A DNA stretch of 64,000 bases from Octopus sinensis (GCF_006345805.1 NC_043010.1:1054001-1118000), one strand, 5' to 3'; shown: positions 6,557-55,968, counted from the first letter of the stretch. Program-made: numbers and translations. The notes: a model not told the origin generated them from the letters alone.

Positions 6557-6755
6557 ACTTTTTCTATTCCTGAGAGTTATACTAATACATCTGTTTGTTT
6601 TGTACACCACTTGTCTTCGTCTTTTGCTTTTTTCGTAAACTCTTCCTATATATATATATATATATTATATATATGTGTGTATGTATATATATAATATATA
6701 TATATATGTGTATGTATATATATAATATACTTTATTTTAAGCAGCAGAAAATTCA

Positions 6756-6807
6756 ACAAAATCTGTTACTCTGAGTTTCTCGTTGCCGTTCATCAGACAG
6801 TTTTTGC
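6756..6807 (-). ncRNA. Type I hammerhead ribozyme motif
   Basis: Minus strand GCAAAAACUGU-CUGAUGA-A-CG(GCAA)CG-A-GAAA-CUCAGAG-U-A-ACAGAUUUUGU: intact core, GUA site, stem I of 4 bp + mismatch + 6 bp, quasi-palindromic stem III. Stem II is weak. Confidence 0.75.
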
Positions 6808-6871
6808 TAGAATGGAACTGATATATCAATTGAATTGAATTGAATTGAATTGATATATCGGTTCCATTCTA

Positions 6872-6923
6872 GCAAAAACTGTCTGATGAATGGCAACGAG
6901 AAACTCAGAGTAACAGATTTTGT
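6872..6923 (+). ncRNA. Type I hammerhead ribozyme motif
   Basis: CUGAUGA 6883-6889, GAAA 6900-6903, GUA 6910-6912 (predicted cut after 6912), stem I CUGU/ACAG plus GCAAAA/UUUUGU. Stem II is minimal. Confidence 0.75.
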
Positions 6924-7060
6924 TGAATTTTCTGCTGCTTAAAATAAAGCATATTACTCTACCACTGGTATTTGAGTACTCTTTTTTCCACCTTGTTTCA
7001 CATTTATGTGTTTACTCCGGTATATATAATATATATATATTTTATTATCAGTTATCAGTA

Positions 7061-7327
7061 TATGTTGTGTTCTTGAGCAATACACTTTATTTCACATTGC
7101 TCCAGTTCCCTCATCTGTAGAAATGAGTTGTGACTTCACTGGTGCCAAGCTGTATTGGCCCCTTTGCTTTTCCCTTGGATAACATTGGTGGTGAGAAGAG
7201 AGGAGACAGGTATGCATGGGCGATTGCTGGTCTTCCATAAACAACCTTGCCTGGACTTGTGCCTCGGAGGGTGACTTTCTTGATGCAATCCCATGGTCAG
7301 TGTCGTGACCAAAGGCCATCTTTACCC
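7061..7327 (+). mobile_element. SINE family F (5'-truncated)
   Basis: Body and tail match the copies at 7736-8020, 41312-41585 and 53941-54160. Confidence 0.8.
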
Positions 7328-7735
7328 ATTACCCTTTTATCAGTTATCCATAGACGAAACTATATCATTCTTCCTGTCATCATTTTTTCTGCACAAAATA
7401 GCATCTGCTGATTGCAAGTCCTCACTGAACAGTTCTTATTTCACAGATTTCCTTCACTTAAATGGACTGTCTTCATTAAAACTGGTGAACACCTCCTACC
7501 TTAAATTCTACTGGATAGCTGTTGACACTCTTCAGTATCTTTACCCTTTGGGAAGGTCTTGTTTTCCATCCTGGAAGGTGTCTAAAAGCCACCCGCCTCA
7601 CCAAGCAAGCTTGTTGGGTTTTCTGGGTTTAGTTGCTAATGACCCAACCACACAAGGTGTACAAGATTACATGTTACCAGTAGTGCAAGAGCAACCTCTC
7701 TCTCTCTCTCTCTCACACACACACATATTTAGGAG

Positions 7736-8020
7736 GACCCACTTTGGTCATGAATGATCATGGGATTGCACCTAGAAAGTTCCCCCCTGAAGTACAAGTC
7801 CAAGGTTACTTATGGAAGACCAGCAGTCGCCCATGCATACCAGTCTCCCCTCTCCACACCACTGATGTTATCCAAGGGAAAAGCAAAGGGGCCGATACAG
7901 CTTGGCATCAGTGATGTTGCAATTCATTTCAGACAGCTGAGTGAATTGGAGCAATGTGAAATAAAGTGTCTTGCTCAAGAACACAACACACAGCCCAATC
8001 CAGCAATTGAACTCACTACC
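7736..8020 (-). mobile_element. SINE family F
   Basis: Reverse complement of 7061-7327 plus part of the tRNA-like head. Confidence 0.8.
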
Positions 8021-8454
8021 CCATATATATATATTTTATATATGTGTGTGTGTTATGTATATCTGTTTGTGTGTATATATGCATTTACAATTATAGAGTA
8101 TCATTATTGCTGTAACAGTCCAGTCATAGGTTTTCATATTAATATAGGTTGGATTAGTCTGCAATGGTATTTGACATGTCTGCTAGTTAAATACTATGCT
8201 CCAATGTTCTCAAGACCAATCAAGCTAACTCATGTTCAGCCCCACCACCACCACCTCCACCTCCATACCACCACCACACCAACTCATACATTAACCAAGT
8301 CCAACATCATTTCATCATTTTCTCCTCACACATTGTGTATTTTTCCTTTCCCCCTTTTGCAGGCACCAACTACATGGGGTTTAATTTCTACAAAGGATTT
8401 AAGTTAGAAAGAGGTAATTTCAAGAGTCCATAGACTCAGCATCTCACATTCTGT

Positions 8455-8656
8455 TTATTGCCCACAAGGGGCTAAACATAGAGGGGACAAACAAGGACAG
8501 ACAAATGGATTAAGTCGATTACATCGACCCCAGTGCGTAACTGGTACTTAATTTATCGAGCCCGAAAGGATGAAAGGCAAAGTCGACCTTGGCAGAATTT
8601 GAACTCAGAACGTAACGGCAAACGAAATACGGCATTTCGCCCGGTGTGCTAACGAT
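8455..8656 (-). mobile_element. SINE family B (tRNA-like head, Deu/Nin-like central domain)
   Basis: Reverse complement of the 16758 copy; central gcctttcatcctttcggg...taagtaccagt resembles DeuSINE/Nin domains (recognition only). Confidence 0.8.
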
Positions 8657-9408
8657 TGTTGTCCTGAGTAAATATGGCAGCTTGACAATTATAGAACAAT
8701 GTCTCACCGTAGACTTTTGGAGAATTCTTTGACATATTCATGGTTCTGTTATGATTTGTCTCTGCAGATTAGTCTATTTTGATTGGTTTGTTAGTCAAAC
8801 ATACCATGTACTGTCAGTAATGTCTATGGTCATATTTGTATATCAATGTACACTCACAGATGGATATATATGTAATGGTAGACACACACATACAGGCATA
8901 CATATACAGAGATTTATAAATAGATAGACAGACAAATGAATGAACAGATGTATAGAAGGATTAATAGATAGGTGGATAAATAGATGGATAAACTGATTGA
9001 TAAGTGGATAAATAGATGGACGGAGGGATGAACAGAAAGATGGATGAGATGGATAAGATAAACAGGCAGAGAGATTGATGGAAGGATAAACAGAGAGATG
9101 GGTGGACAAACAGAGAGACGGATGGATAAACAGACAGTTAGATGGATATACAGATAAATAGATGGATAAATAATGGGCAGATAGTCAGATAGATAGTTAG
9201 ATGAGATGTTAAGTGATAGATAAATGGATAAGTATCTTTTATCTATTAACTCGTTTCTGTCATTAGGCTGTGGCCATGCTAGGGCACCACCTTCAAGAAT
9301 TTTCAATATTTTTTTGTTAAGCCTGATATTTATTATATCAGTCCCTTTTGTTGAACAACTACACTAAAGGGACGTATACACACCAGTTTTTAAATGGAGG
9401 TGCAGGAC

Positions 9409-9446
<38 letters not shown>

Positions 9447-9477
9447 GTATAGAGATAGAAAGACAGATGTACATATA

Positions 9478-9512
<35 letters not shown>

Positions 9513-9705
9513 CACCACTTGACAAATGGTGCTGGTTTGTTTGTGTTCCCAAAAGTAAGTTCTTTGACAGGGAGAGACTAACAGAATAAGCATCATTCAT
9601 GAAATAGGTACAAGAGTTGATTTTGTTGGAAAAACCTTTTACAAAACACTTTGAAGTTGTGCTGAAGGATGGTCATGGTACAATGACTAAAACCAAAGAG
9701 ATTAT

Positions 9706-10005
9706 CTTTTATGTTTCAGTCATTGGACTGTAGCCATGCTGGGGCACCACCTTTTTAGTCAAATGAATTGATCACTTTACTTAGCACTTTTGCGAAACCA
9801 CTAAGCTACAGGGACGTAAACACACCAACACTGGTTGTCAAATGGTGGCTGGGGACAAACATAGACATAAAGACACACACACACTTGATGGGGTTCTTTC
9901 AGTTTCCATCTACCAAATCCACTCACAAGGCTTTGGTCTGCACAAGGCTGGGACTGAACCTGAAACCATGTGGTGGGAAACAGACTTCTTACCACACAGT
10001 GATGC
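9706..10005 (-). mobile_element. SINE family A
   Basis: Shared tail tttcagtcatt..gccatgctggggcacc, internal (CA)n and tRNA-like head; more than 15 fragments in the window. Confidence 0.8.
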
Positions 10006-10021
10006 CTATGCATAGATATAT

Positions 10022-10067
<46 letters not shown>

Positions 10068-10742
10068 CGGGAAGCTTTATGAAAATAGACAAAAGACGAA
10101 GGCAGGTGGAATACATATATATATATATATACCTTTACTATTTCTCCTCTGTCTATCTCTCTCCCTCTCTTGTTCTTCATCCTTTCTGGTTTTCTCTCCC
10201 ACCCTTCCCTATTCTTCTCCTCTCCCCTTCACCATTCCCTCTCTCTCAGTCCTCCTCCTTGACTCTCTCATCCTCCTCGAGTTCAGAATATTTTTTCTAT
10301 CGTCTCGGCTTAACAGCCCTCACCCTTTGTTTTTACTGTTTTGTTCTCACTGTCCTGTTCCTGTTACCAATTTCACCCTCTGCAAAAAGTTCCAAATTTT
10401 ATTTGATTTGCTTTGCGGGAAGGACTGTTTCAACGAAGTCGCATCTTGTCCTTGCCTTCGAGACGTGGTGTAGATGAAACAGGGACAACTGAAGAAGGGG
10501 AATATTCTTTATGTTGTATGTCGCATTTCTCTGATTGTTTTATTTTCCCTGTTTGGAAAAAAGTTCGTTTCTATGTTTTTGTTTTTATGTTTTCCTTTCT
10601 CATTGTGTTCAACGTTTCTTTGATGTCCTGTACTCATATATGCATGTATATATATACATATATACGTAGGTATGTACATATATGTATATATATATGCATA
10701 TATCTATATATCATTTATATTATATTTATATTATATATATAT

Positions 10743-10777
<35 letters not shown>

Positions 10778-10905
10778 TGGCCTGCTTGTTTAGCCAGCGG
10801 GGTGGTGTGATTTGAAGGCTAAAAACAATGCGAAGCACAATGTGACCAGCGATGTGTAGCAACATCTGACAACCTGGTCGGTCACGGTGATCATGGTGAT
10901 ATATA
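10778..10905 (+). mobile_element. SINE family C, 3' fragment
   Basis: Matches 20985-21100; flanked by (TA)n. Confidence 0.75.
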
Positions 10906-11166
10906 TATGTAATGCTTGTGTATATGCTTTCAAACAGTTTTTATCAACCAACTTCTGCTCACAATGCATTGATCAGCCCAGGTCTATGTTACAAACCATT
11001 TGTGCGTAAGTTCATAATTAGAAACACATGTATATCATCTCAAACATATGTGTATAAACACACACACACACATTTGTATAGCATTGTAGCACTTATTCAT
11101 ATTTACACAAAATTCTGTACATATGTGTAACTACTTCCTTTTAATTACTTATATACATGCATACCT

Positions 11167-11204
<38 letters not shown>

Positions 11205-11799
11205 GAGTGCAAGACTACATATTCACATATTCACATTCATGTGTATATATTTATATGTCCATATGTTTTATTGTAAGACTGTATGTATAAATGAATTAAA
11301 TACAAAGCTGTACACACAACAATTACCTGTCGTGCACCTGAGCACTATATACAATAAGCGTATTATTATTCTATATTCATAGACAACTGTATGTGTATGT
11401 ATACACACACACACAACACACACACACATACAAACATACACGCATGTGTGCGCATATATAAAGGTTTTAATTCAGGTATACACTCACAATAAATGCATAA
11501 ACCCACAGACATGCAATATTCATCATCATCACAATAATTTAAGTCAGTTTTTCCACGCTTGCCTGGGTTATATTTAAGTGTGTGTGTGTGAGTGGTGTAT
11601 ATATGTGTATATGTATACATATGTATATACACACACAAACTTATTTATCTACGTGTCTTTATATATATATATATATATATGATGATGATGATGATATGTA
11701 TGAGAGAGATAAATAGAGGGAAAGATAGATATGTACAGATATACACACACACATACTCACATAGATACTTACATACATAGGTATCTACATACACACATC

Positions 11800-11845
<46 letters not shown>

Positions 11846-13054
11846 CATATATACTGGAGAGAAAGTGAGATAGAGAGAGTGAGTGAAAGAAAAGAAGAAA
11901 GCAATGAGGCAGGCAGTCAGCCAGGCAGGCAGTTACTCATGCACAAGTCGCAGCATGCAGCGGGTGGATATGGACAGGTAAATAGAAGCTGTACGTTATC
12001 TTGCCAAAACTTTAAACAGTTGTTGACAGAGCCGTATTTTCTTGTGCCTTCAACTGCTGCAACTGCACGCACTCCGTGCATAGGCTTATTGCTATGCACA
12101 TGCAAATCATTGCATGAACTAGAATGAACACGCACGCTGTCCACGTATGCGTGCACGTACGTATATAAGTCTTTGTATACAAGCTTATATGTGTGGGTGT
12201 GTGTGGGTGTGTGTGTGCATGCCTGTGTGTATGTGTGTGTATATATATATATATATATATGTATGTATTGGTGTATATATCTATATGTATTGTATATATT
12301 ATATATATTTAGATATCTATAATATATATGTATATATCTATAGATATATATATGTTGTATGTATACATATATAACATTAACCATGTGACTATGGGATGTG
12401 ATGTCATGTTGTGTGTGTGTGATGATTAGAAACTGTTGGAAGAGAAGTGAAACAGAAGAATTTTTAGGGTCAGCTTAGCAGGGGAAATGGGAGGCGAAGT
12501 GGGGGGGGAGGAGAGTGAAATGCAGTTAAAGTGAGAATACAAGAATACAAGATGGAGGAAAGATAGAGAGGAAGGTAAGGAAGAAGAGAGGAAGGACAGA
12601 TATTGGAAGAGAAAGAGTAATAAGCAAAGGCACATACATATATAAATGTAAATATGTAAATTATGCATGTGTGTGTATGTGTGTGTGATTATATGTATAC
12701 TTATGTATGTGGATATGTATATATGTGTGTGTGTGTGAGTATGTATATATGTATGTATACACACACACATGTATGTATGTATAAGAAAGTACTCAATACT
12801 CAAAGAAATAAGGCTAGTGCAATAAGAATCTTTGTTCCTTGTTTTAATATACATTGTATTCATAGATACACGCACACATATATATATGTATATATATATC
12901 AATAGATAAATAGATACACAGATACATACATACACAATCATATGTATGTACATGTCTATGCATATAAATAATACATACATATGCATATATACATATATAT
13001 TTGTATATCAGTGTGTGGGTGCGTGTATAATATATATAACAATATGTGGGTGTG

Positions 13055-13088
<34 letters not shown>

Positions 13089-14047
13089 ATATATATATAT
13101 ATATATAAATATAAAGATAATATATATATATTTAGTTATATATATTATATATATGTATTCATATTTATATATATATTATATATATCGAGATATATATATA
13201 TATATCTACATACATAGATAAATATAAATATATATATATATATATTAATATATATATATATCTATATATAGAATATATATATGTAACATATATATATATG
13301 GAGATAGAGACCGGCAGACAGAGAGCACAAGGAGGGAAGAGTAACAAATAAATTTCACAAGTCAATTCAATTTATTTCTCAAACAATGAATGTTTTTATG
13401 TTTCATGATATTTACAACGAATGTATTTATTGAAAGTTGGAAATGTATAATCCTTACTAATATTTCAAAACAAAATCATATATTTGAAATATTATATTTC
13501 CTTCCTTTAGTTGTGAATAAGTTCTTTCAGGCATGGAATGGTCTTTGAATCTACATATATTGCCAAATATCTCTGTATTTTGGATTATTTCAATTTATTC
13601 TTTCCATTCTAAAACTGGTTCCTGTTGGTAGGCTTGCAGTCACGCTCTGATGACCCTACCATCTTCAAAGCTTTGGTTTTTAGTCAACCATATCAGTATG
13701 TCCTCCCCACCGGCCATGCAGCTGCCCTGCACCCACAATTTTTCTGGGACTCATTTTTCTTTTCTTTTTTCTTTTGTCAGTGTTGTAAGGAACGGACGAC
13801 AGGCAAGGTGGACATGGGTGTAAAAAGGATGTAAATTAGATGGGAACAACTAGCACAAAATGTGTTGTTTCTTTCGTTTGGCAACCCCTTAACCATTATA
13901 CAGAGGAACTCTTGGCACTTAAATATACAACACACATACACACATTTATACATGGATATGTGTGTGTGTATATACATATCTGCCCACGTATACTTCTGTA
14001 CAAATATATATATATAAACACATAAACATACATATAGAGACATTAAC

Positions 14048-14082
<35 letters not shown>

Positions 14083-15203
14083 CATAGCTTCCTTATGTAG
14101 AGCTTGTTTGACGGCATGGGCACACACCACACACACACACACATATACATGCATACATATGAACACAACCATACATGCTTTATATATATATGTTCATATA
14201 CATATATATATATGTATATGTGTGGCTGTTCAGTAATAAATTGTCAACCCTCATACATTGCCTAACAGCAGGAGTCCATGTCTCTCTCTTTCTCTTTCTC
14301 TCTCTCCTCTCTCACACACACACACGTTTTTATAAACACATGTACATACCCGCAAACGTACATACATATACATATACATGTACACATACAAACACATACA
14401 TATAATCTCTATACCTATGCACCATGTAGAGATGAATTGTAAATAATTTATCAGTGTATATTTAATAAACATATATTTAATATATTTGATAAACATATAT
14501 TTCATCAAAATGTGCAAATATCCCCCTTGGTAACCCTTGTGGAATGAACTGCAGAACAACTTCACTAGTTTTGCCAGGTTATTGCCAGCTCATCAGGAGA
14601 GTTGCTTTATTTATTCCAGAGAATGAGAGAGAGAGAGAGAGAGAGAGAGCAGAAAGAGTGACAAAGAGACAGAAAGGAGAGAGGGGCAGAGAGAGAGAGG
14701 AGAGGAAAAGAGAGAGAAATGGACAGAAAGAGGGGCAGAGAGAGAGAGAGAGAAGACAGAAAGAGAGAAAGAGAGACAAATGGAAAGAGAGAGAGAGAGA
14801 GAGAGTAACTAACAATGGTTTATGAAAAATCTAATCATTAAGAGACTGTGATTTTGTTCGTTAGCAAATCAGTGTAGTTACCAGCATCTTCGTCATTTTT
14901 GTTAACATATTTCTTGTTAACATGGCTGTGTTTAAATTAATATTCTAAAGACACAGTTAAGAATCTCACTTTGGCACCACATGGTTTCAGGTTCAATTCC
15001 AATGCATGGCATCTTATGTAAGTCTTGTCTGCTATAGCCCTAGGCTGAACCAGTGTTTAACTGGTACTTACTTTGTCAATCTCAGAAGGATGAAAGGCAA
15101 AGTCGACCTGGGCGGAATTTGAACACAGAACATGACAGATGAAATGCTAACGATTTTGCCAGATTGCTGCCTTTGTTTTGTCATAAATATTAAGCTGGAA
15201 TAA

Positions 15204-15420
15204 GGTAGTGAGCTGGCAGAATCATTGACATGTTGTAAAATTGCTTAGTGGCATTTCATTCATCTTTATGTCCTGAGTTCAGATTCTGTCGAGGTCAACT
15301 TTGCTTTTCATCCTTTCGGGGTCAAAAAAATAAGTACCAGTTAGGCACTGGGATCGATGTAATTGACTTACCACTCCAACCACCGAAATTGCTAGCCTTG
15401 TACCAAAATTTGAAACCAAT
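15204..15420 (+). mobile_element. SINE family B (alternative tail)
   Basis: gagctggcagaatc head and B central domain; an inverted B fragment lies at about 15050-15170. Confidence 0.75.
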
Positions 15421-15870
15421 ATTATCTTGGTATCTGGAACATAAAATATCCTGAAATTCTAATGGAAGGTTATAATTAAGAATATTTTAAAACAGGGAGT
15501 TTGTATCCTGGAACCACCAGAAGATTCAGGTGGGTTTGGTATCACAAAAGGTTAAGAAGTTAAACAAAAACAGACACACTGGCTAACACATCATTTAATC
15601 TACCCATCTTCACTTTTTCATGATTGCATGAGTCAGAAGAAATTTGTTAAGGCAGATTATTTTTTTTACAGCTGGATACCTTTCCAGTTGCCAACTCTCA
15701 CATGTTTCAAGCAAGGTAATATTTCCTACATGGAAGGCTAGAAGCAAACAACACATGTATGACCATGTTGCTTGTTTACAACTATTGCATGATGTAATGT
15801 CAAGACAAGGGTACACATAAAAATGCACACGCATATACACACATACATATATATTCTTTTCTTTTATTCT

Positions 15871-24720: not shown

Positions 24721-24725
24721 TACAC

Positions 24726-25047
24726 ACAATTGCTGCATGGAAAGTGTTTATAAGCCATTTAAAAACTCACAAAAACCGTTAGATACACTGCAACATTTAA
24801 ATTCAATCTGCCAAAATATTTTCGTCACTTTCAGACTGTGACCTGGTCACTGACAAAATTCCGTGCTGCATGGAGTTTCGTCAAAGTGATGAAAATATTT
24901 TGGCAAATTAAATTTAAATGTTGAAGTATATCTAACGGTTTTTGTGTGTTTTTCAATGCCTTATGAACACGTTCCATGCTGCAACTGTTTTTGTTTCAGT
25001 ACACGTTCTTAGATCAGGTCACTTGCTATGCAAGTACATCTCCGTAA
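24726..25047 (+). mobile_element. Twin-hammerhead fold-back element
   Basis: About 105-bp inverted arms 24726-24831 and 24883-24988, with pairing continuing toward the centre. The plus arm has an about 20-nt deletion through the HHR core and runs on to (TA)n at about 25047. Confidence 0.7.
24807..24857 (-). ncRNA. Hammerhead motif with compensatory G3:C8 core
   Basis: UUUGUCA-GUGACCA-G-GUCAC(AGUCUGAAA)GUGAC-GAAA-AUAU-U-U-UGGCAGA: 7-bp stem I, 5-bp stem II, AAUAUU palindrome, UUU site. Confidence 0.65.
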
Positions 25048-26235: not shown

Positions 26236-26452
26236 GGTGATAATAATATGACAACAGAAGAATGAATGAGACCTCGGTATTATGTAAAATAGAGGAATTA
26301 ATCTATAAATATCCTGTAACAATTAGTCGGTTGTCATAATACAACTCAGAGTTTCGGATGCTGGGTCTCAAGTCTGCTCCAACATCTCATCAGTTATTCT
26401 GATGTGATGCTGGAACAGACTTCAGCCCTGGAATAACAACAGACTAATTGTC

Positions 26453-26454
<2 letters not shown>
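26236..26454 (-). mobile_element. Twin-hammerhead fold-back element
   Basis: Centre catcag-ttatt-ctgatg; 26316-26338 is inverted at 26433-26454; the plus copy is internally deleted; (TA)n on both flanks. Confidence 0.65.
26338..26398 (-). ncRNA. Type I hammerhead motif
   Basis: AAUAA-CUGAUGA-GAUGUUGG(14 nt)CCAGCAUC-C-GAAA-CUCUGAG-U-U-GUAUU: intact core and 8-bp stem II; the first stem I pair is mismatched. Confidence 0.65.
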
Positions 26455-27765: not shown

Positions 27766-27834
27766 CAAAAGAAGGACACTCAACGAATTTATTGCGAGTT
27801 ACATGTATGAATTGAAACAGTCTGATTCAAATCC

Positions 27835-27879
27835 AATGGCACTCTTGAATTTCAAGTGCGATGCTAGTCATCAGCCATT
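27835..27879 (-). ncRNA. Hammerhead motif with non-cleavable site
   Basis: AAUGG-CUGAUGA-CUAGCAUCGCACUU-GAAA-UUCAAGAG-U-G-CCAUU: perfect stem I and core, but position 17 is G. Confidence 0.6.
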
Positions 27880-27924
27880 TTTTGCTGACGATTAGCATCA
27901 TGCTTAAAACTCAAGAGTACCAAC
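27880..27924 (+). ncRNA. Hammerhead motif with G12A and truncated stem I
   Basis: CUGACGA 27885-27891, AGC/GCU stem II, AAAA instead of GAAA, ACUC-AA-GAGU stem III, GUA site 27917-27919. Confidence 0.55.
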
Positions 27925-27947
27925 GAATTTGAATCAAACTGTTTCAA

Positions 27948-27985
<38 letters not shown>

Positions 27986-41311: not shown

Positions 41312-41585
41312 GGGTAAAGACCCCCTTCGGTCATGAATGACCATGGGATTGCACATAGAAAGTTCCCCCTGGGCAAGGTTGCTTATGGAAGACCAGCAGT
41401 CACCTATGCATACCAGGCTACCCAAGGGAAAGACAAAGGGGCCGATACAGCTTGGCACCAGTGATGTTAGAACTCATTTCTACAGCTGAGTGAAATGGAG
41501 CAACGTGAAATAAAAAGTCTTGCTCAAGAACACAACACACTGCCTAGTCTGAGACTTGAACTCACTACCTGATGATTGTGAACCC
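41312..41585 (-). mobile_element. SINE family F
   Basis: Matches 7736-8020 with internal deletions. Confidence 0.8.
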
Positions 41586-45989: not shown

Positions 45990-46256
45990 AACTTCACACC
46001 CTCCTCTCCCCACTCCCTCTCTTCTTCTCTAACAGCCATCAAAATTGCATGGTCGCATACGCAAATCACTCACACACACACACACACATATATACATGCA
46101 CATACACACATACATATTCAATAAATCCATCTCTCCACTGTTCTTCATTTCTCATCTCTCTCTTTCTTGCTCTCTGTTTCTCTGTCTCTGTTTCTCTCTT
46201 GCTCTCTTTCCCTCTCTTTCTCTATGACTATACCTATGCCTCTATTTTTGTCTTTC

Positions 46257-46355
<99 letters not shown>

Positions 46356-46368
46356 GTTTACCTATCTA

Positions 46369-46408
<40 letters not shown>

Positions 46409-46928: not shown

Positions 46929-46992
<64 letters not shown>

Positions 46993-47147
46993 CATTATTA
47001 TTATTATTGCTACTCTATAGAAAAATAATAACGAAATTACTAGGAAAATGCAAAAAACCCACAGACATACACAAAAAAAAAGCAATGACTATGATGATGA
47101 CGATGATGATGATGGTAATAACAATGATGTGATGCTGGGAGTGGTGG

Positions 47148-47183
<36 letters not shown>

Positions 47184-47587
47184 CGATATCGATGCTGAGC
47201 ATTGCACAACTGACGAAATAAAGAAGAATCAGCAGTCACAAAGAGAAAGAAAAACAGCAGTAGTTGAAGGAGGTGGAGGAGGAGGAGGGGGAGAAGAAGA
47301 AGAAGAAGAAGAAGAAGAAGAAGAAGACAGAAGAAGGAGGAAAAGAAGAAGAAGAAGAAGAAGAGAAGAATGTGAGAAGAAGGAGAGAAGAAGAAGAAGA
47401 AGAAGAATGAAGAAGGAGAGATGAAGACAGAAGAAGAAGAAAGAAGAAAAGAAGAGAAGAAGAGAAGAAGAAGACGACTAAGATGAGAAGAGACATAAGA
47501 AGAAGAAGAAGAAGAAGAATAAGAAGAGAAGAAGAAGAACAACAACAACAACAACAACAACAAGAACAACAAGAACAACCAGAACAA

Positions 47588-47619
<32 letters not shown>

Positions 47620-48260
47620 AGAACAAGAGTGGGCTGAGAGACAAATATGAAAAGTGAAACAACGTGATTATGTTTTATGTGTTATAATTTGACATTTTGT
47701 CAGCTGCAAAACTTTTCAATTTCCACTCAATTTACACTATTGTGGTAAAAACAACCATTTCCTACCACCACCACCACCACCACCATCACCACTACCACCA
47801 ACACCACTATTACTACTATCACCACCACCATCACCACCACTACCACCACCACCAACAACAACACTACAACTACTATCACCACCACCACCACTACCACCAC
47901 CAACAGCAACACTACAACGACTATCACCACCACCATCACCACTACCACCAACACTACTACTACTTCTACTACCACCTACAACAACACCACCACACAACTA
48001 CTAATAACAACAGCAACACCACAACTACTACTACTACCACCACCACCACCACCACCACCACCACTACTACTACTGCTACTACATCCTGTAAAGTGTTGGT
48101 AGATTACTACAGCTTAAGCCGCTACAAGCTTTACTACAACAGCAACAACAGCTAACATCACCAGCACAACCATCACAGCCACTAACACTGCCACTACAAT
48201 CACGACGATGACGACGACTACCACACCACCACCACCACCACCACCAATACTGTCATCACA
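45990..48260. repeat. Mosaic of (CT)n, (CTAT)n, (ATT)n, (GAT)n, (GAA)n, (CAA)n and (CAC/CTA)n
   Basis: Direct inspection; accounts for the 323-aa, 215-aa and poly-His ORFs. Confidence 0.9.
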
Positions 48261-48857
48261 CATATCGTCAGCACCACTTCCTCCATCCTTACAACCAACA
48301 TCACCGCTACACTCACCACCATCACCATTGCAACTGCTAACTACCGTCCAACAACGGCTTGTTGGTAACCACTACCTCTACCATCTAAACTATCTTAGAG
48401 ACTGTCACATTTGCTAACCACTACTGCAGTCAACAACACCTTCATAGATGCCGAAATATCCATTACCATTACTACTACTAATACTAATAACTTCGACTGA
48501 GAATATTTCTGTATTTCTTCATCTTTACGTCTCTCTGGCATCTCCGTCTCTGATGACGATCTACGCAGCTTACGGAATCCTTACACAATATCATCATCCA
48601 CATGCTCGTCTGTTCTAGAAACGGTTGTAAGTAACTCTATGTTTATATTCTCTTTCTAAAATAAATGTATTTTTCTGATAGTGTACTACGTAGTCATTCG
48701 ACTTGCTAGAAATTCCGCCTCCCCCTCTCTCTCTCTCTCTCTCTCTTTCAGTTAAGGAAGTCTCGCCTTTATACATTGAAAAACAACAGACATCACAAAC
48801 AACAGCAACACGAATATTATCTCATCACTTTAAAGTTAAGCCATTCCTTCCTGAAAT

Positions 48858-49545
48858 GCGGCGAGCCGGCAAAATCGTTTGCACGTCGGACAAAACGATT
48901 AGCGACATTTCATCTGGCACTTTGTGCTCTGAGTTCAAATCTTGCCGAGGTCGACTTTGCCTTTCATTCTTTCGGGGTCAATAAAATAATTATCAGTTGA
49001 GCATTGGTGTCGCTGTAATCGACTTACTTCTTTCCCCCCAACCGCTGGCCTTGTGCCAAAAATTCGTCTGCCGTTACGTTCTGAGTTCAAATTCCGCCGA
49101 GGTCGACTTTGCCTTTCATCCTTTCGGGGTCGATAAATTAAGTACCAGTTATGCACTGGGGTCGATGTAATCGACTTAATCCCTTTGTTTGTCCTTGTTT
49201 GTCCCCTCTGTGTTTAGCCCCTTGTGGGCAATAAAGAAAAAAGAATCGTTAGCATATTGGGCGAAATGCTAAGTGGTATTTCGTCTGCCTTTACATTCTG
49301 AGTTCAAATTTGCTCGTCGGACATAACAATTAGGACATTTCAGCTGGAATTTTGTGCTCTGAGTTCTAATCTTGCCGAGGTCAACTTTGCCATTCATCCT
49401 TGTGCCAAAAAAAAAAAAAAAAAAATTGTTATTACAATTGTTACGAAGGCAAGCTGGCAGAATCGTTAACACTTCGGACAAAATGCTTAACAAGCAGCAT
49501 TTATTCCAGCCCTTTGCGTTCTGAGTTCAAATCCCGCCGAGGCAA
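48858..49545 (+). mobile_element. Tandem cluster of four SINE B copies
   Basis: About 48858-49065, 49065-49242, 49243-49400 and 49445-49545. Confidence 0.8.
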
Positions 49546-49894
49546 ATTCTAAGTCAACAAATACAGTTTATCAACAGCAATAGCAACATGACAACTGCTT
49601 TAAAATAACGTCAACAATAGCAAAATAGCAACAGGCCACATGTAATAAAGCACGGAAAGTTACGCAACAACAACAGCAACAGCAACAACAATCACTGCAC
49701 TGCACCCCCCCTCAAAAAAAAAACAGGAATAGCACAAAATAGTAAAAATACAATAAAGCAAATTATAATGGAAATGTGACATTAACGCAACAGCAGCAAT
49801 AACAACAAGATCTGTAGCAGCACCGTCAGCAACATCAGCAGCAGCAGTAATAACAGTAACAGCAGCATTATTATCAACAACAAGGAGCAACAGT

Positions 49895-50082
49895 GGAGGC
49901 GCAATGGCCCAGTGGTTAGGGCAGCGGACTCGCGGTCGTAAGAACGCGGTTTCGATTCCCAGACCGGGTATTGTGAGTGTTTATTGAGCAAAAACACCCA
50001 AGTTCCACGATGCTCAGGTGGGGTGGGTGGTGGACCCCGCTGTACTCTTTCACCACAACTTTCTCTCACTCTTTCTTCCTAC
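49895..50082 (+). mobile_element. SINE family C, 5' part
   Basis: Matches 20807-20985; B box ggtttcgattccc. Confidence 0.8.
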
Positions 50083-50156
50083 TTCTGCCACAAAGCAGAG
50101 GAACCATGGCGTAACCCACTATGGTGTGGTAGAACTTTCAGACCCTAGTCTTCATT

Positions 50157-50350
50157 CATTCATTGGAATTTACTATGCTACGCCAGACTTCACGGTCCAT
50201 CAAAGCATTACGGAGGTCCTGTTACTGGATGCCTGTATCCCTGGAGATTACATCAGGGTAGGAGAGTGTGCGCCCTCTGGTATCGCGAGTAGATGGCTTC
50301 CAGAGGAGAAGAGTAGAAATTGCTTCGTTTTCAGCTCTACAACAATGTCC
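50157..50350 (-). pseudogene. RTE-clade LINE ORF C-terminal remnant
   Basis: Translates GHCCRAENEAISTLLLWKPSTRDTRGRTLSYPDVISRDTGIQ*QDLRNALMDREVWRSIV, the typical RTE C-terminus (GHxxR..LLLW.P..GR..Y.D.I.RDTG..M.DR..WR); one in-frame stop. Confidence 0.75.
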
Positions 50351-51097
50351 TCTGTACCCTAGGATGGTTCAGCTCTCCACCTGTTCGTAGCTTTCGCACC
50401 CGTGCAACCGCCAATCTGTCGCATGTGGTGGGTGGATCTTCAAGTTGCCACACGCATTCTTAGTAGCTTAGAGTAGGCTTGAATTAGAGATTATTCTTTG
50501 TGGCTAATGGCGTGAATTCTGATTGGAAGAAGTAGAAGAAGAAGAAGAAGAAGAAGAAGAAGACAGCAACAATAACATTAGCAACAGCAGCAGTGGCCTG
50601 GCTCTTCGTCGGTTACGACAACGAGTGTTCCTGTTGATTCGACCGAACAGCCTGTTCGTTAAATTAACGTTCGAGTAGCTGAGTACTCCACACTAATCTT
50701 TACGTACATTTTCTTCTTATGCTTGCAACGGTTGTTACCGTTGTTGCCACTGCTTTTCATTTTCTCTTTTCTTTCTTTTTCCTTTTTTCTCGCAGTATCC
50801 AAGAAGGGCAGCGCCCCTGGCCTTTGGAATTAGTTCCACGTAGATCGATAAGATCGAATGTCATTAACGTAATTGCCAGGGAGATACAGCGTGACACAAA
50901 ATAGGACAAGGCTACCCCTTTGAAATGCGGGTAGAGCGATCGTGAGCCGAACAGCCTAACCACCAAACCCCGTGACTTCTTCACAACAACAGTAGCAACA
51001 ATATCCGTAGTAGCAATATCAGTCGCAACAACAGCAACAATTGTTGCAATACAAGCATAAGAAAATAAGGTACGTAAAGACTACAAAAGAACAACAA

Positions 51098-51250
51098 CGT
51101 GGCAGTGTGTTAGGTAGCTTGCTCACGAACCACATGGTTCTGGGTTCAGTCCCACTGCATGGCACCTTGGGCAAGTGTCTTCTACTATAGCCTCGGGCCG
51201 ACCAAAGCCTTGTGAGTGGATTTAGTAGATGGAAGCTGAAAGAAGCTAAC
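51098..51250 (+). mobile_element. SINE family A head
   Basis: gtggcagtgtgttaggtagcttgc..ggttcagtcccactgc..ccttgggcaagtgtc; a similar head lies at 53386-53542. Confidence 0.8.
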
Positions 51251-51399
51251 GTTTCTGCCAGCTCGCCGCCTTTTATTTTAGATTCTTTTATATGATACTG
51301 ATTGACCTGCTAAAAATAACAGTAATAATTTCCTTTATCCCACAGCTGCTGGCCGTTTTGAAAAAAAGACTACTTTGGATAATGGTCACCATTACCGGC

Positions 51400-51830
51400 A
51401 TATCTCCCTAGAGCACCAATTTTTTGCACCTGCCAGTTGGTCAATGTGTAACAATTAACTTCAAGGCCTATTATCAGAGAACTTTGAAATAACTCATAAA
51501 AAGCAATTGATAGTGAGAATAAACTAGTTATTAGAAACTTGTGCACAAATTCCAACGTTACCAATGGAAGTAGATGACGTAGCTGAGTTATAGGATGAAG
51601 TGAAACCCTCAGCAATGAAGTTTGTTTGGAATAAAACATGGCCAAACTCTATCCAGCACTTCACATGTTTTCGACCAGTTCATACGACGTTCTGAAAGAT
51701 ATTGTGACACTGGTAAAATGATACAGTTCGTAGAAGACTGTAGGATCGAGTTGTTAAGGTCCTCAAGAGAAAGTTTGTTAAATGAAGATATAACAGTGTT
51801 TGAACACGAGCGAGCTGCAAAGTTGGACTG
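51400..51830 (+). pseudogene. Decayed pogo/Tigger (DDE_1) transposase, C-terminal part
   Basis: Across frameshifts: LPVGQCVTINFKAYYQRTL, DEVKPSAMKFVWNKTWP, ELLRSSRESLLNEDITVFEHER, matching Tigger QPxDQGxIxNFKAYY, WxKLWP and ELLxSxxEELxNEDL motifs. Confidence 0.75.
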
Positions 51831-52386
51831 GCTCCATACAGTCCACTTCAGCCGACAGCAAAGGACGAGGTTAAAGAACAGGCATATATAGAGGGAGGGC
51901 TGCACGTTTTTGCCGACGACGAATTTAATCGTGAATGCCACACTAAAATTACATGAGTTCATGATTAGCTCAGAGATGTACAAAGAGATGATGTGACTTA
52001 AACGCCAAACAACTCTGGTTCAGTTTACCTTTGAAGTAACTTTCACTGTACTATCACCAGGCAACACTTATGGTGAGTATATATTGCATCTTTTAGCTTT
52101 TAGCTTGTACTTGTTTCAGTCATTAGACTGCGGCCATGCTGGGGGACCGCATTGAAGAATTTTTAATCGAACAAATCGACACAAATAATGTTTTTTTTTT
52201 GTAAGTCTGGTACTGACGTCCAACCCATGCCTGCGTGGAAAGCGGACGTAAAATGATGATGATGACGACGGATTTTCCTTCAAATATTTCTCTGTATACA
52301 TACTGTACCACCTGTGTTTATAAACTGATATTTTGATGCACAAATGTGGTTTTAATACATACATACATACATATATATATATATAT

Positions 52387-52434
<48 letters not shown>

Positions 52435-52589
52435 TATATATATATATATAATATATATATATATATACATGTGTGTGTGTGTGTGTATTTAGAGCTAAAC
52501 TACTAGGTGGATAACCATACGCTAGAAGGCTACTGTTTTAAACTGATATTAATTAAATTAATATTCAATTTATCTCCCTCCTCATTATT

Positions 52590-52664
<75 letters not shown>

Positions 52665-52685
52665 TAGATAGATAGATAGATAGAT

Positions 52686-52761
<76 letters not shown>

Positions 52762-53651
52762 TACAAACAAATACATCATTATTTATCCACGAAAAATCTT
52801 CCGTCGGAAGGGCATCTTAATTTCTAAACATAAAAATCGGCAGTAAAATAGTAAAATAGATTTCGTGTTACAACAAGATTTTGAAGAACTCGGAATTTAA
52901 AAAGGAGTGGTGGTGGTGGTGGTGGTGGTGGTAGCGGTACTGCTGCTGCTGCTGTATCACAGTTAAATAAGGAGGAGGATGGAGAAATTAGCTGAAATGA
53001 GAGGAGTTAGAATTAAGGAGGATAATGATAATTATGACGGACAGTGGTCAGCCATAAATCTATTTTGGACAGAGGTTTGAGTGATGGGGAGGAGTTATAG
53101 GGATGGTATGTGAGGGGATTGATAGGATGGGTTAGAGTAGTATAGCTATGACAGAGGCAATAAATTAGGGAATAAAGGTTTGGAAAAGGGGCGGGGCGGG
53201 GTTAGATAATGCTACTAATTATATCATTACGTATCCCCTTCTAATATCTGCATGCGATCGCTTAGGGGTTTTGAAGCCCTGCACATGTACGCAGAAGAAC
53301 ACACTCTTATGCATTCATGAGTGTATGTATATGTATGCATGTGTGCGTGTGTGCGTGTGTGTGTGCGTGTGTGTGTATGCGCAGACATGGCTGTTTGGTA
53401 AGTAGCTTGCTTACCAACCACATGATTCCGGGTTCAGTCCTACTGCGTGGCACCTTTGGCAAGTGTCCCCTACTATAGCCTCGAGCCGACCAAAGCCTTG
53501 GAGTGGATTTGGTTGACGGAAATTGAAAGAAGCCCGTCGTATGAATGTATATATATATATATGTATATAATATATATAGATATATATATATATATTATAT
53601 ATATATATAGATATATATAATTATATATATTATATATATATATATATAATA

Positions 53652-53686
<35 letters not shown>

Positions 53687-53940
53687 TATTATATATATAT
53701 ATATATATTAGTGTATGTATGTGTGTATGTTGATATATATATATATTGATAGATAGATATATATAAATGTATGTGTAGTGGATCTTGCAGGCATGAAGTG
53801 GATTCGATCCACCATAGCGAAATTTAAATTAACAATTCAACAGAACTTTTCTCACAGTAAAACAATAGTTTTTCTGTGACAGGAGTTTTACATTTCACAG
53901 ATTGCCTTAGCTATGTCTAAATAATGTCTTTACCACTTGA

Positions 53941-54160
53941 CCACTCAGCTGTAGAAATGAGTTGCGACGTCACTGGTGCCAAGCTGTATCGACCTTTGTC
54001 TTTCCCTTGGATAACACTGGTGGCGTGGAGAGGGAAGGCTGGTATGCATGGGCGACTGCTGGTCCTCCATAAACAACCTTGCCCGGACTTGTGTCTAGGA
54101 GGGTAACTTTCTAGGTGCAATCCCATGGTCATTCATGACCGAAGGGGGTCTTTACCTTTA
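53941..54160 (+). mobile_element. SINE family F, 3' part
   Basis: Matches 7110-7327. Confidence 0.8.
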
Positions 54161-54902
54161 CCTTACCACTTGACCCTTCTAACCTCTCCTAGACTACTAA
54201 AAGCTAGAATTAAGATAAGTACCACCAACAAAATCTATTGTTCTCAACGATATGTCTATCCTTCTGGATAGTTATAAAAGCAAGAACCCCAAGCAAAAAT
54301 CAGTTAGTCACATGGTGACAACTCAGTCGGCTCGTGACAACTCAATCAGTTAGTTAATGAATGATAACTCGAGTCAGAGACAGCTACCATCAGTTAGGGA
54401 GCGGAACGCCAGAATCATGATCACACGCAATGCAGCTACGAAAGACAATGGTCAGAGGGAGAAATGAAATTTACTGTCATCAACTATGAGACAACTTCCC
54501 ACGGCCCTACAACTTTTACTAGCTCTAATTCTTATCTCTTACAACATCATTCTATCGCTATCAATGGATTACTGCTAAGAAAATGTGTACACAAAACTAT
54601 ACAAGGAAAATCTACCACATCTAACTTTCCTTCACACGCTCTAGGATTATAGCACCTGCCCGTCGAGGCAAGGTATATTCAATGTAACGGCAAAAATAAA
54701 TATTTTCTTCACAACTTCAATTACTGTTCTTTCATCTTTACATAATAGCAATCAACAAAGAACCAATCATTATAAACTGATTACATCCATCCTACTGTGT
54801 GCCAAATCCATCTTTTTGTTAACAAACTGGTTACGACTCCGACATTTCATATTACTGTTTACAAATTAATTTCAACCGATACAAAATAATCTTCATCGTT
54901 AC

Positions 54903-54933
<31 letters not shown>

Positions 54934-55314
54934 TGTATGTATGTATGTATGTATGTATGTATGTATGTATGTATGTATGTATGTATGACAAACAAGGGTT
55001 AATACGGAATATTAATCCTGGCAAAATACTTCTTAAGATCCCTGCAGATAAAAGTACATTAGGCTAACAAAAGAAGTCATTTGATCGGTATTGTACTCCA
55101 AGTACTCCGAAATCCCAAGCTGAAATCAAAGCACATCACCAGCTATATTTCTAAATCCATGGCTGCGTTATCCAGTTAAGATTGTATAGCTCTGAAGAAT
55201 TGAACCGTGAACGCACACAAATTAATATCTGAAACAACTGTAAGCCTATAATAAGTAACTAAATACATATAACCCATTATTTCTCTCTATGCTTTACACA
55301 CACACACACACACA

Positions 55315-55355
<41 letters not shown>

Positions 55356-55424
55356 ACACACTCGCATGCACACACACACACATATAGCAAATGAACGGAA
55401 GATGGAATATACGAGAATTTATTA

Positions 55425-55530
55425 ATCAGGACAATTGTTTCGAAACATCTAAAATTAATCCCACATGGGTGGGACACTCAACAACTGGTTCAGGAGCATC
55501 CGGCGGTGCAGACGTATTTCGTCGGGTAAT
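55425..55530 (-). ncRNA. Decayed hammerhead with long stem II insert
   Basis: AUUAC-CCGACGA-[about 77 nt]-GAAA-CAAUUG-U-C-CUGAU: U4C in the core, ACAAUUGU palindrome, GUC site. Confidence 0.5.
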
Positions 55531-55688
55531 AAATAGATACAACTCCTTAAAATAACAGTTCCACAGTGAAACTTCTCGTTTTGTAGAAAGAAAAGCAGAC
55601 AGACAGAGGAAATATCTTCATTTATATAGAAGACCAAAGATAAAATCACAGATTGGTAAAAGAGAAAGAAACGTGTTCGCTTTCTCTT

Positions 55689-55789
55689 CTTTTGAGATAC
55701 ATCTGCACCGCCGGATAATCCTGAACCAATTTTTGAGCGTTCCGCCCATGAGGGATCGATGTTAGATGCGTCGAAACAATTGTCGTGAT
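55689..55789 (+). ncRNA. Inverted partner hammerhead, core truncated
   Basis: GAUACAUCU/AGAUGCGUC stem II base, GAAA 55773-55776, GUC 55782-55784, GUGAU; only the GA of the core survives. Confidence 0.45.
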
Positions 55790-55968
55790 TAATAAATTCT
55801 TGTATATTCCACCTCCTGTCTTTCATTTGCCAAATACATAACGACCATTGTGAAAATGACTGTGCTTTACCAGTTAGCTGCCAGGTGTAAACCATTCGTT
55901 TTATTATCCAATATATATGTGTGTTGTCCACTTTAGTGGTTATTCCTTTAATTTTGAATATATATTTG

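What the first reader, a model, noticed from the sequence alone, without database searches (positions are those of the whole stretch)
6723..55816. Recurrent ORF-less head-to-head twin-hammerhead fold-back elements from five unrelated families
Seen: five inverted repeats (6723-6956, 24726-24988, 26316-26454, 27811-27948, 55397-55816) share no obvious sequence but have the same design. Each arm carries a type I hammerhead pointing outward, one arm runs on to a 3' tail (AATAAA in three cases), the other is truncated, and (TA)n flanks most. Known: Penelope-like elements carry minimal HHRs in their pLTRs and often have inverted truncated pLTR ends. Inference: this is a class of 140-560 bp non-autonomous ribozyme retroelements, or a stereotyped insertion product, mobilised in trans by PLE RT/GIY-YIG and abundant enough to occur five times in 64 kb.
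Basis: partly seen in the sequence, partly recalled or inferred. Interest (0 to 1): 0.9.

Follow-up and report, generated by a model that had tools for sequence, protein, structure and literature searches.

The report
Inverted-pair insertions of hammerhead retroelements
Five short palindromic DNA elements beside microsatellites look like the known back-to-back insertion scars of Penelope-type retroelements; three carry hammerhead-ribozyme sequences, so this is a clear example of a known phenomenon, not a new class.

Summary
All five inverted repeats are real, at the stated coordinates. Each has one arm beside a microsatellite and 58-149 nt of unique DNA on the other side.

Hammerhead (HHR) sequences are present in only three of them:
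- E1 (6723-6956): both arms.
- E3 (26316-26454): one arm.
- E4 (27800-27959): both arms, degenerate.
- E2 and E5: no HHR core.

E1 and E4 are homologous along the whole arm, so the five families are not all unrelated.

A pattern scan of metagenome contigs, probably stony-coral DNA, recovered canonical type I HHRs with the same helix III. They show the same layout: head-to-head twin HHRs 10-56 nt apart, a ~65-nt tail on one arm, a microsatellite at the other. Solo copies there have 11-13 bp target-site duplications.

The literature already describes this architecture for Penelope-like elements (PLEs): an inverted 5'-truncated copy, a one-sided tail and (TA)n bias. It also reports HHR pairs on opposite strands, and HHR retrozymes as non-autonomous PLE derivatives.

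Best reading: ORF-less, PLE-type insertion products. This is solid for E1, E3 and E4, architectural only for E2, and open for E5.

Not shown: ribozyme activity, copy number in the source genome, or the mobilising PLE.

The parts
6723..6839 (-). E1 left arm: inverted copy that directly abuts a (TA)n-rich tract and has no tail
   Evidence: 117 nt, 96% complementary to 6840-6956.
6757..6806 (-). E1 left-arm hammerhead-like motif: cugu-CUGAUGA-ACGGCAACGA-GAAA-CUCAGAGU-A-acag
   Evidence: 40.8 bits, E 1.4e-10 with the external HHR model R1..
6840..6956 (+). E1 right arm: direct copy; the centre junction lies in an (AATTG)n / CAATTG palindrome
6873..6922 (+). E1 right-arm hammerhead-like motif. Core and helices I and III are intact. 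Helix II is only 2 bp, with an A.A at its base.
   Evidence: 39.9 bits, E 2.7e-10; the minimum-energy fold does not favour the HHR shape (z -0.05).
6957..7020 (+). E1 one-sided tail (64 nt) between the right arm and the next (TA)n. It holds the hairpin ACUC-UACC-ACU-GGUA-UUU-GAGU followed by ACUCUUUU.
   Evidence: the best window hit of the coral-only tail model R2 is 6953-6994 (15.5 bits, E 0.069); alignment to external tails, z 3-4.3; the motif is unique in the window; the hairpin folds, z -2.0.
24726..24831 (-). E2 left arm: inverted copy abutting (TA)n; no HHR
   Evidence: 106 nt, 89% complementary to 24883-24988; no HHR.
24832..24882 (-). E2 centre: a shortened inverted copy of the right arm's 3' end plus the first ~36 nt of the tail
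   Evidence: score 25, z 4.8, reached by 1 of 500 shuffles; inverted repeat I2.
24883..24988 (+). E2 right arm
24989..25046 (+). E2 one-sided tail (58 nt) before (TA)n
   Evidence: part of it is repeated in inverted form in the centre, so it belongs to the repeated unit.
26316..26393 (-). E3 left arm carrying the only complete E3 hammerhead-like motif: CUGAUGA, 8-bp helix II, bulged C, GAAA, CUCUGAGU, U. The model hit spans 26333-26403.
   Evidence: 18.6 bits, E 0.0025; the pattern is absent from 100 shuffles..
26399..26454 (+). E3 right arm. It starts with CUGAUGU, has lost the GAAA/helix III part through an internal deletion, and abuts (TA)n.
   Evidence: inverted repeats I1 and I2.
27800..27875 (-). 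E4 left arm with a degenerate hammerhead-like motif (model hit 27830-27884): aaugg-CUGAUGA-...-GAAAUUCAAGAGU-G-ccauu. Position 17 is G.
   Evidence: 18.0 bits, E 0.004; homologous to the E1 arm, z 9.6.
27884..27959 (+). E4 right arm with a more decayed motif (model hit 27876-27929): CUGACGA and G12 changed to A. It abuts (TA)n.
   Evidence: 13.6 bits, E 0.11..
55387..55520 (-). E5 left arm abutting (CA)n; no HHR core
   Evidence: no ribozyme.
55521..55693 (.). E5 non-palindromic centre (173 nt) of unassigned origin
   Evidence: no significant relation to the flank.
55694..55830 (+). E5 right arm, followed by ~78 nt of unique DNA (55831-55908) before a TA-rich tract

Best explanation
The five fold-backs are ORF-less insertion products of Penelope-like-element (PLE) type retrotransposition. 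They are very short non-autonomous or severely 5'-truncated copies.

The likely route, all of it inferred: an RNA carrying a type I hammerhead near its 3' end is reverse-transcribed at a staggered endonuclease break in a microsatellite. Priming from both DNA ends, or a template switch, gives two copies whose 5' ends meet at the centre, often at a short palindromic microhomology. Their 3' ends face outward. One copy keeps a roughly 60-nt 3' extension, the 'tail'.

How firmly this holds for each element:
- E1, E3 and E4 belong to an HHR-bearing lineage that also occurs in the (probable) coral contigs.
- E2 shows the same tandem/inverted-plus-tail layout without a ribozyme.
- E5 shares only the outline.

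What is shown: the inverted repeats, the HHR homology, the tail and the link to microsatellites. What is inferred: the mobilising enzyme and the priming mechanism.
For: - HHR homology. An external HHR model hits E1, E3 and E4, and nothing else in the window scores below E 1. The pattern CTGATGA..GAAACTCNGAGT occurs 3 times against 0 in 100 shuffles. Helix I covaries between E1 (CUGU/ACAG) and E4 (AUGG/CCAU).
- Same design elsewhere. L019, L035, L040 and L083 have twin HHRs 10-56 nt apart, one arm running into a ~65-nt tail and the other abutting (TA)n or (ATA)n. Of 23 external HHR loci with enough context, 6 have an inverted copy directly upstream, 1 is a clear tandem and 16 are solo.
- Retroposon marks in the external solo copies. 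They have 11-13 bp target-site duplications and variable 5' ends (L010, L060, L073, L089).
- Tail. E1's tail is the top window hit of a coral-only tail model, exactly at the end of the arm. The tail hairpin is 91.8% paired, and the outermost pair occurs as GC, AU and CG. That count includes the manually read E3 and E4 tails, which searches do not confirm as homologues; without them only E1's AU supports the variation at that pair. E2's centre repeats part of its own tail in inverted form.
- Microsatellite adjacency for all five elements.
- Literature. An inverted 5'-truncated copy, a one-sided 30-40 bp tail and (TA)n bias are PLE hallmarks (PMC8557442). Opposite-strand HHR pairs were ascribed to truncated PLEs (PMC4209133). 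Animal HHR retrozymes are related to PLE pLTRs.
Against: - No RT or GIY-YIG coding remnant is in the window.
- No second copy of any of the five families is in the window. The source genome could not be reached, so mobility of these particular families is unproven.
- E2 and E5 lack any HHR.
- E3 and E4 'tails' are not recovered by the tail model and are not significantly similar to E1's.
- Target-site duplications cannot be read because the flanks are microsatellites.
- E1's helix II is only 2 bp with an A.A at position 10.1/11.1, E4's motifs break core rules, and E3 has a bulged C. Catalytic activity is therefore doubtful.
- The external HHRs were fetched with a pattern derived from E1 and E3, so the model's hits on those two are partly circular.
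- E3 and E4 scores (14-19 bits) are close to those of chance controls chosen only for the 5' half-site (13-16 bits).
Confidence: 0.62

Rival explanations
1. Local fold-back (inverted) duplications made during repair or replication of breaks at fragile microsatellites. One arm plus the 'tail' would be the original unique sequence and the other arm its snap-back copy. Nothing would be mobile.
For: The asymmetry follows naturally from a fold-back event: one arm at the microsatellite, the other continuing into unique DNA. None of the five has another copy in the window. E5 has no ribozyme, no recognisable tail and no internal tail repeat.
Against: Three of the five carry the same HHR module, which also occurs in mobile multi-copy elements elsewhere. 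E1's tail matches the external element tail. E2's centre holds a third, partial inverted copy that includes tail sequence, which a single snap-back does not predict.
Confidence: 0.15
2. Miniature inverted-repeat DNA transposons (for example Tc1/mariner-derived, TA-targeting) whose long terminal inverted repeats happen to contain hammerhead-like sequence.
For: The elements have long inverted arms, small size, no ORF and TA-rich flanks.
Against: No target-site duplication can be seen at E2, E3 or E5 (read directly). The tail on one side only breaks the symmetry. The arms join at variable points and E3 has an internal deletion. The related external elements occur as 5'-truncated solo copies with 11-13 bp duplications and with inverted copies of variable length. 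That pattern is typical of retroposons.
Confidence: 0.08
3. Hairpin-RNA genes (microRNA or endogenous siRNA precursors), or assembly artefacts, with the hammerhead resemblance incidental.
For: The long hairpins score against several plant and animal miRNA models, for example MIR821 at 126 bits for E1.
Against: All of those scores are far below each family's gathering threshold and only reflect hairpin shape. The arms differ by 4-23%, which does not fit an assembly fold-back. The HHR and tail homology to external elements is specific.
Confidence: 0.04

Closest known systems
Penelope-like element (PLE) insertions with pseudo-LTRs (Evgen'ev & Arkhipova 2005; Arkhipova 2006; Craig et al. 2021, PMC8557442)
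   Same: An inverted 5'-truncated copy lies head-to-head with a direct copy. An extension (tail) is present at one end only. Insertion favours (TA)n and other microsatellites, which hides target-site duplications. The HHR sits in the terminal repeated region (canonical EN+ clades).
   Different: No RT/GIY-YIG ORF is present. Units are 140-450 bp. Tails are 58-65 nt or longer, against the published 30-40 bp. Two of the five have no HHR, as in Naiad/Chlamys PLEs, but membership of that clade was not tested.
Metazoan non-LTR retrozymes (Cervera & de la Pena 2020, PMC7229834; Li et al. 2026 preprint)
   Same: Small (150-450 bp), AT-rich, ORF-less elements with a type I HHR, thought to be mobilised by PLEs. 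The external contigs found here carry about 220-nt long forms, which matches the reported 220-240 bp coral repeats in size.
   Different: Retrozymes are defined by head-to-tail tandem arrays and circular RNAs. The window has no tandem copy, only inverted pairs. Expression and circularity are untested.
Minimal HHRs of PLEs found as opposite-strand pairs (Cervera & de la Pena 2014, PMC4209133)
   Same: Two HHRs lie close together on opposite strands, interpreted as truncated PLEs.
   Different: Those pairs were 100-700 bp apart and of the minimal type (1-bp helix III with a palindromic loop). Here helix III is a 3-bp ACU/AGU stem. In E3, E4 and the external contigs the two cores are only 5-56 nt apart.
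Twin priming of LINE-1 (inversion plus 5' truncation)
   Same: It offers a mechanistic analogy: both ends of a staggered break prime reverse transcription, giving inverted segments joined by microhomology.
   Different: The enzyme family differs. L1 twin priming inverts part of a single copy and does not produce two full 3' ends. It was not tested here.

Membership tests
Hammerhead ribozyme, type I | Conserved core: C3-U4-G5-A6-N7-G8-A9, G12-A13-A14, A15.1-U16.1, and H17 not G | tested here: inconclusive
   Met in E1 both arms and in the E3 left arm. Not met in E4: the left arm has G at position 17 and the right arm has A at position 12. Absent in E2, E5 and the E3 right arm.
Hammerhead ribozyme, type I | Three helices around the core, with helix I open and helices II and III closed | tested here: inconclusive
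   Helix I: 4+4 bp in E1, 5 bp in the E4 left arm, 6 of 8 in E3, with two compensatory changes between E1 and E4. Helix III: the 3-bp ACU/AGU stem in all. Helix II: 8 bp with a bulged C in E3, but only 2 bp with an A.A base in E1 and a U.U base in E4.
Hammerhead ribozyme, type I | Match to the curated Rfam hammerhead models | tested here: not met
   No hammerhead family is listed at E<=10, even in 251-nt and 1.7-kb sub-windows. The control failed as well: canonical external HHRs are also missed at E<=0.01. This result is weak.
Hammerhead ribozyme, type I | Site-specific self-cleavage | not testable with these tools
   Needs in vitro transcription and cleavage assays.
Penelope-like element insertion (autonomous or trans-mobilised) | ORF with a PLE-type reverse transcriptase and a GIY-YIG endonuclease | tested here: not met
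   The elements hold no ORF longer than 48 aa except one chance ORF across E5. Ten long non-repeat ORFs of the window have no Pfam hit. This fits a non-autonomous copy only.
Penelope-like element insertion (autonomous or trans-mobilised) | Tandem and/or inverted 5'-truncated copies (pseudo-LTR architecture) | tested here: met
   Head-to-head copies in all five. E2 has an additional partial inverted copy.
Penelope-like element insertion (autonomous or trans-mobilised) | Extension (tail) at one end only | tested here: inconclusive
   Met for E1 and E2. For E3, E4 and E5 only a one-sided unique segment is seen, and its origin in the element is not shown.
Penelope-like element insertion (autonomous or trans-mobilised) | Insertion bias for microsatellites | tested here: met
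   All five abut a simple-sequence repeat on one side. The probability per element is ~0.19 for one-sided adjacency and ~0.09 for both criteria.
Penelope-like element insertion (autonomous or trans-mobilised) | Multiple dispersed copies sharing 3' ends with an autonomous PLE in the same genome | not testable with these tools
   The source genome is not in any reachable collection. No second copy is in the window.
Metazoan non-LTR retrozyme | Head-to-tail tandem repeats of 150-450 bp, each with a type I HHR | tested here: not met
   The window has no tandem copy of any of the five. One external locus (L120) is tandem.
MITE (TIR DNA transposon) | Terminal inverted repeats flanked by a fixed-length target-site duplication | tested here: not met
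   Inverted arms are present, but no duplication is seen at E2, E3 or E5. E1 and E4 are ambiguous because their flanks are (TA)n. The tail breaks the symmetry.

The most novel reading that the evidence does not exclude
Twin-HHR mini-palindromes could be the most compact natural record of the still unsolved PLE integration reaction. The conserved hairpin in the ~65-nt tail (NCUC-UA..UA-UU-GAGN, shared by E1 and at least four external, probably coral, families) could be a previously unrecognised RNA or DNA recognition element for the PLE reverse transcriptase or endonuclease, conserved across animal phyla.
Probability: 0.15. Interest if true: 0.65.

Novelty: new member of a known kind. Interest (0 to 1): 0.38.

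Why it matters
How PLEs integrate is still unknown, including why they leave tandem and inverted copies and a tail on one side. Very short copies have both junctions, both 3' ends and the tail readable within about 300 bp. Here and in the external contigs, that makes junction microhomology, truncation points and tail structure easy to tabulate genome-wide. For annotation, such palindromes are easily miscalled as MITEs or miRNA hairpins. Recognising them as PLE-type products would correct repeat libraries for microsatellite-rich invertebrate genomes.

Tried and rejected
- Rfam at gathering and permissive thresholds on the whole window and on sub-windows: no hammerhead. Discounted because canonical external HHRs are also missed.
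- A strict home-made HHR descriptor requiring helix II of at least 2 bp closed at the core: 0 hits. E1's A.A base fails it.
- Reading an HHR in E2 and E5, including the U3-A8 core variant and permuted topologies: nothing convincing. E5's CGAAAC-AAUU-GUC half-site has no partner core or helix II.
- Protein-route attempts to reach the source genome: a search with the E5 ORF and two exact-ORF look-ups all found nothing.
- Viral-contig scan with the upstream signature shared by E1 and E4: 28 matches, all scoring 13-16 bits with the HHR model, so chance. They served as a control.
- Supplement searches for published HHR or PLE sequences: nothing held.
- Homology of the E3 and E4 tails to E1's tail or to the external tails: visually suggestive, but not significant. 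I do not claim it.
- A PLE ORF upstream of the external HHR units (L031, L062): none found. The ORF on L062 is an unrelated multi-copy coral protein.


Full report
**1. The observation**

The window is AT-rich eukaryotic DNA: GC is about 0.35, 11.5% is simple-sequence repeat and there are 216 (TA)n tracts of at least 4 units. Its SINE-like repeats remind me of cephalopod genomes. That is from memory only, because the source genome could not be reached.

All five inverted repeats exist at the stated coordinates:
- E1, 6723-6956: a 234-bp palindrome with 117-nt arms, 96% complementary.
- E2, 24726-24988: 106-nt arms, 89%, with a 51-nt centre.
- E3, 26316-26454: inner and outer inverted repeats around a 5-nt centre. 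The right arm has an internal deletion.
- E4, 27800-27959: 76-nt arms, 80%.
- E5, 55387-55830: arms of about 135 nt, 83-84%, with a 173-nt centre.

None has a second copy in the window. In each, one arm lies within 15 nt of a microsatellite, and the other side has 58-149 nt of unique DNA before the next one. A random segment of the same length meets both criteria with probability of about 0.07-0.10, so five out of five is not chance.

**2. The hammerheads**

Rfam reports no hammerhead family in the window, even at E<=10 in sub-windows of 251 nt and 1.7 kb. Reading the sequence around every CTGANGA gave these motifs:
- E1, both arms: cugu-CUGAUGA-A(C/U)GGCAACGA-GAAA-CUCAGAGU-A-acag.
- E3, left arm: CUGAUGA-GAUGUUGG...CCAGCAUC-C-GAAA-CUCUGAGU-U.
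- E4, both arms: a degenerate pair.

The pattern CTGATGA-N8-38-GAAACTC-N1-2-GAGT occurs three times in the window and never in 100 shuffles.

I spent the single metagenome scan on that pattern. It returned many contigs with fully canonical type I HHRs, for example cugc-CUGAUGA-GUGC-GUAA-GCAC-GAAA-CUCAGAGU-U-gcag. A multi-copy ORF on one of these contigs has a Porites protein as its only named relative. They are therefore probably stony-coral host DNA.

A covariance model built from 22 of these external HHRs was run over the whole window without filters:

| Element | Position | Bits | E-value |
|---|---|---|---|
| E1 left arm | 6757-6806 (-) | 40.8 | 1.4e-10 |
| E1 right arm | 6873-6922 (+) | 39.9 | 2.7e-10 |
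| E3 left arm | 26333-26403 (-) | 18.6 | 0.0025 |
| E4 left arm | 27830-27884 (-) | 18.0 | 0.004 |
| E4 right arm | 27876-27929 (+) | 13.6 | 0.11 |

Nothing was found in E2 or E5.

Two caveats apply. The external set was fetched with a pattern taken from E1 and E3. And chance sequences chosen only for the 5' half-site reach 13-16 bits. Against that, the model also matches the unpaired flanks of E1 and E4, helix I shows two compensatory changes between E1 (CUGU/ACAG) and E4 (AUGG/CCAU), and E1 and E4 align along the entire arm (z 9.6).

Rfam's silence is not informative, because it also misses the canonical external HHRs.

Catalytic competence is doubtful:
- E1's helix II is 2 bp with an A.A at its base, and its fold is no better than shuffles.
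- E4 breaks core rules: G at position 17 in one arm, A at position 12 in the other.
- E3 has a bulged C.
- A U.U mismatch at the base of helix II is known in natural axolotl HHRs (PMC7229834). An A.A mismatch is not, to my knowledge.

E2 and E5 contain no ribozyme by any test.

**3. The same design elsewhere**

In the external contigs the HHR unit ends at a fixed 3' point (...CCCAAUUCUA). It is followed either by target DNA or by a ~65-nt tail.

- L019, L035, L040 and L083 are head-to-head twin-HHR palindromes. Their arms are 71-80 nt and the two cores lie 10-56 nt apart. One arm runs into the tail and the other abuts (TA)n or (ATA)n. That is exactly the design of E1, E3 and E4.
- Other loci have inverted copies truncated inside the ribozyme or just after it (L017, L084), a tail in inverted orientation upstream of a direct copy (L062, L024), or a tandem pair (L120, L102).
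- Short solo copies have 11-13 bp target-site duplications (L010, L060, L073, L089).
- Of 23 loci with enough upstream context, 6 have an inverted copy directly upstream, 1 is clearly tandem and 16 are solo. The sample is biased by the way it was fetched.
- Long forms are about 220 nt, the size reported for coral retrozyme monomers. No PLE ORF lies next to them in the loci I held.

**4. The tail**

The external tails share a two-step hairpin, GCUC-UA(N)...(N)UA-UU-GAGC, followed by ACUCUUU. It recurs across several HHR families.

- E1's 64-nt segment between the right arm and the next (TA)n has the same motif: ACUC-UACC-ACU-GGUA-UUU-GAGU-ACUCUUUU.
- That segment is the only match to the motif in the window.
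- It aligns to external tails with z 3-4.3.
- It is the top window hit of a model built from external tails alone, positioned exactly at the end of the arm (15.5 bits, E 0.069).
- Pair counts support the hairpin: 91.8% of cells are paired and the outermost pair occurs as GC, AU and CG. However, those counts include E3 and E4 sequences that I could not confirm as homologues.
- In E2, the 51-nt centre is a shortened inverted copy of the right arm's 3' end plus the first ~36 nt of its tail (z 4.8). The tail therefore belongs to the repeated unit, and the locus is a tandem/inverted composite.
- For E5 nothing comparable was found.

**5. Interpretation**

The published description of PLE insertions matches point by point (PMC8557442): partial tandems, an inverted 5'-truncated copy at the 5' end, a 30-40 bp tail at one end only, a bias for (TA)n that hides target duplications, and HHRs in the pseudo-LTRs.

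Cervera and de la Pena (2014) already noted HHR pairs 100-700 bp apart on opposite strands and ascribed them to truncated PLEs. Animal HHR retrozymes have been proposed, and recently argued phylogenetically, to be non-autonomous PLE derivatives.

I therefore read E1, E3 and E4 as PLE-type insertion products of short HHR-bearing RNAs. E2 is the same kind of product from an HHR-less family. E5 is undecided.

The mechanism is inferred, not shown: priming from both ends of a staggered break, or template switching, with the copies joined at short palindromic microhomologies. Examples are AATT in E1 and TTAA in L040.

Rivals:
- Local fold-back duplication at fragile microsatellites. This remains a live option for E5.
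- TA-targeting MITEs. There is no duplication, the tail is asymmetric, and the relatives behave like retroposons.
- Hairpin-RNA genes or assembly artefacts. Only sub-threshold hairpin matches exist, and the arms differ by 4-23%.

**6. Verdict**

The elements are new members of a known kind rather than a new class.

The points worth keeping are how compact these copies are, which makes PLE junctions easy to read; the recurrence of the design in a second animal lineage; and a conserved tail hairpin shared by E1 and the external families, which deserves a proper genome-wide test.

Noticed in passing
window 7100-7260 (+), 7794-7951 (-), 41372-41500 (-), 53944-54092 (+): A SINE-like repeat family with four copies of about 130-160 nt. 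Two of them form a 130-nt inverted pair 551 nt apart, right next to E1. From memory it resembles cephalopod SINEs; this was not verified.
   Followed up: partly
window 14558-14596 (-): A solo sequence CUGAUGA-GCUGGCAAUAACCUGGC-AAAA-CUAG-UG next to a (CT)n tract. It looks like a decayed minimal PLE-type hammerhead (palindromic CUAG loop, A at position 12, weak helix II). The HHR model does not recover it.
   Followed up: partly
window 60799-60898: A run of exactly 100 N, presumably an assembly gap.
   Followed up: no
whole window: Very high microsatellite load: 11.5% in perfect simple repeats of 12 nt or more, and 216 (TA)n tracts of at least 4 units. These give hundreds of sub-threshold matches to miRNA families such as mir-297 and mir-3149 in permissive Rfam scans.
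   Followed up: partly
L019 1148-1191, L040 (-) 2375-2403, L013 (-) 4223-4245, L102 4227-4249, L024 (-) 221-248, L053 89-114, and window 6955-6980: A conserved two-step hairpin (NCUC-UA..UA-UU-GAGN followed by ACUCUUU) in the one-sided tail of HHR elements. It is shared by several external (probably coral) families and by E1. I found no description of it in the papers I read.
   Followed up: partly
L084 1380-1564; L017 1-300 (-): External loci where the inverted copy stops after or inside the ribozyme. In L084 a single HHR sits in the loop between inverted copies of the 3' region. This shows a continuum of truncation points for the inverted arm.
   Followed up: partly
L019, L040, L013, L120: The Rfam hammerhead models did not report fully canonical type I HHRs in these loci at E<=0.01. 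Rfam-based scans may therefore under-count this HHR class.
   Followed up: no
window 6723-6956 and 24726-24988: Transcribed through, the palindromes would form perfect hairpins of about 100-117 bp (sub-threshold matches to long plant MIR models, up to 126 bits). They could be sources of small RNAs. This was not tested.
   Followed up: no
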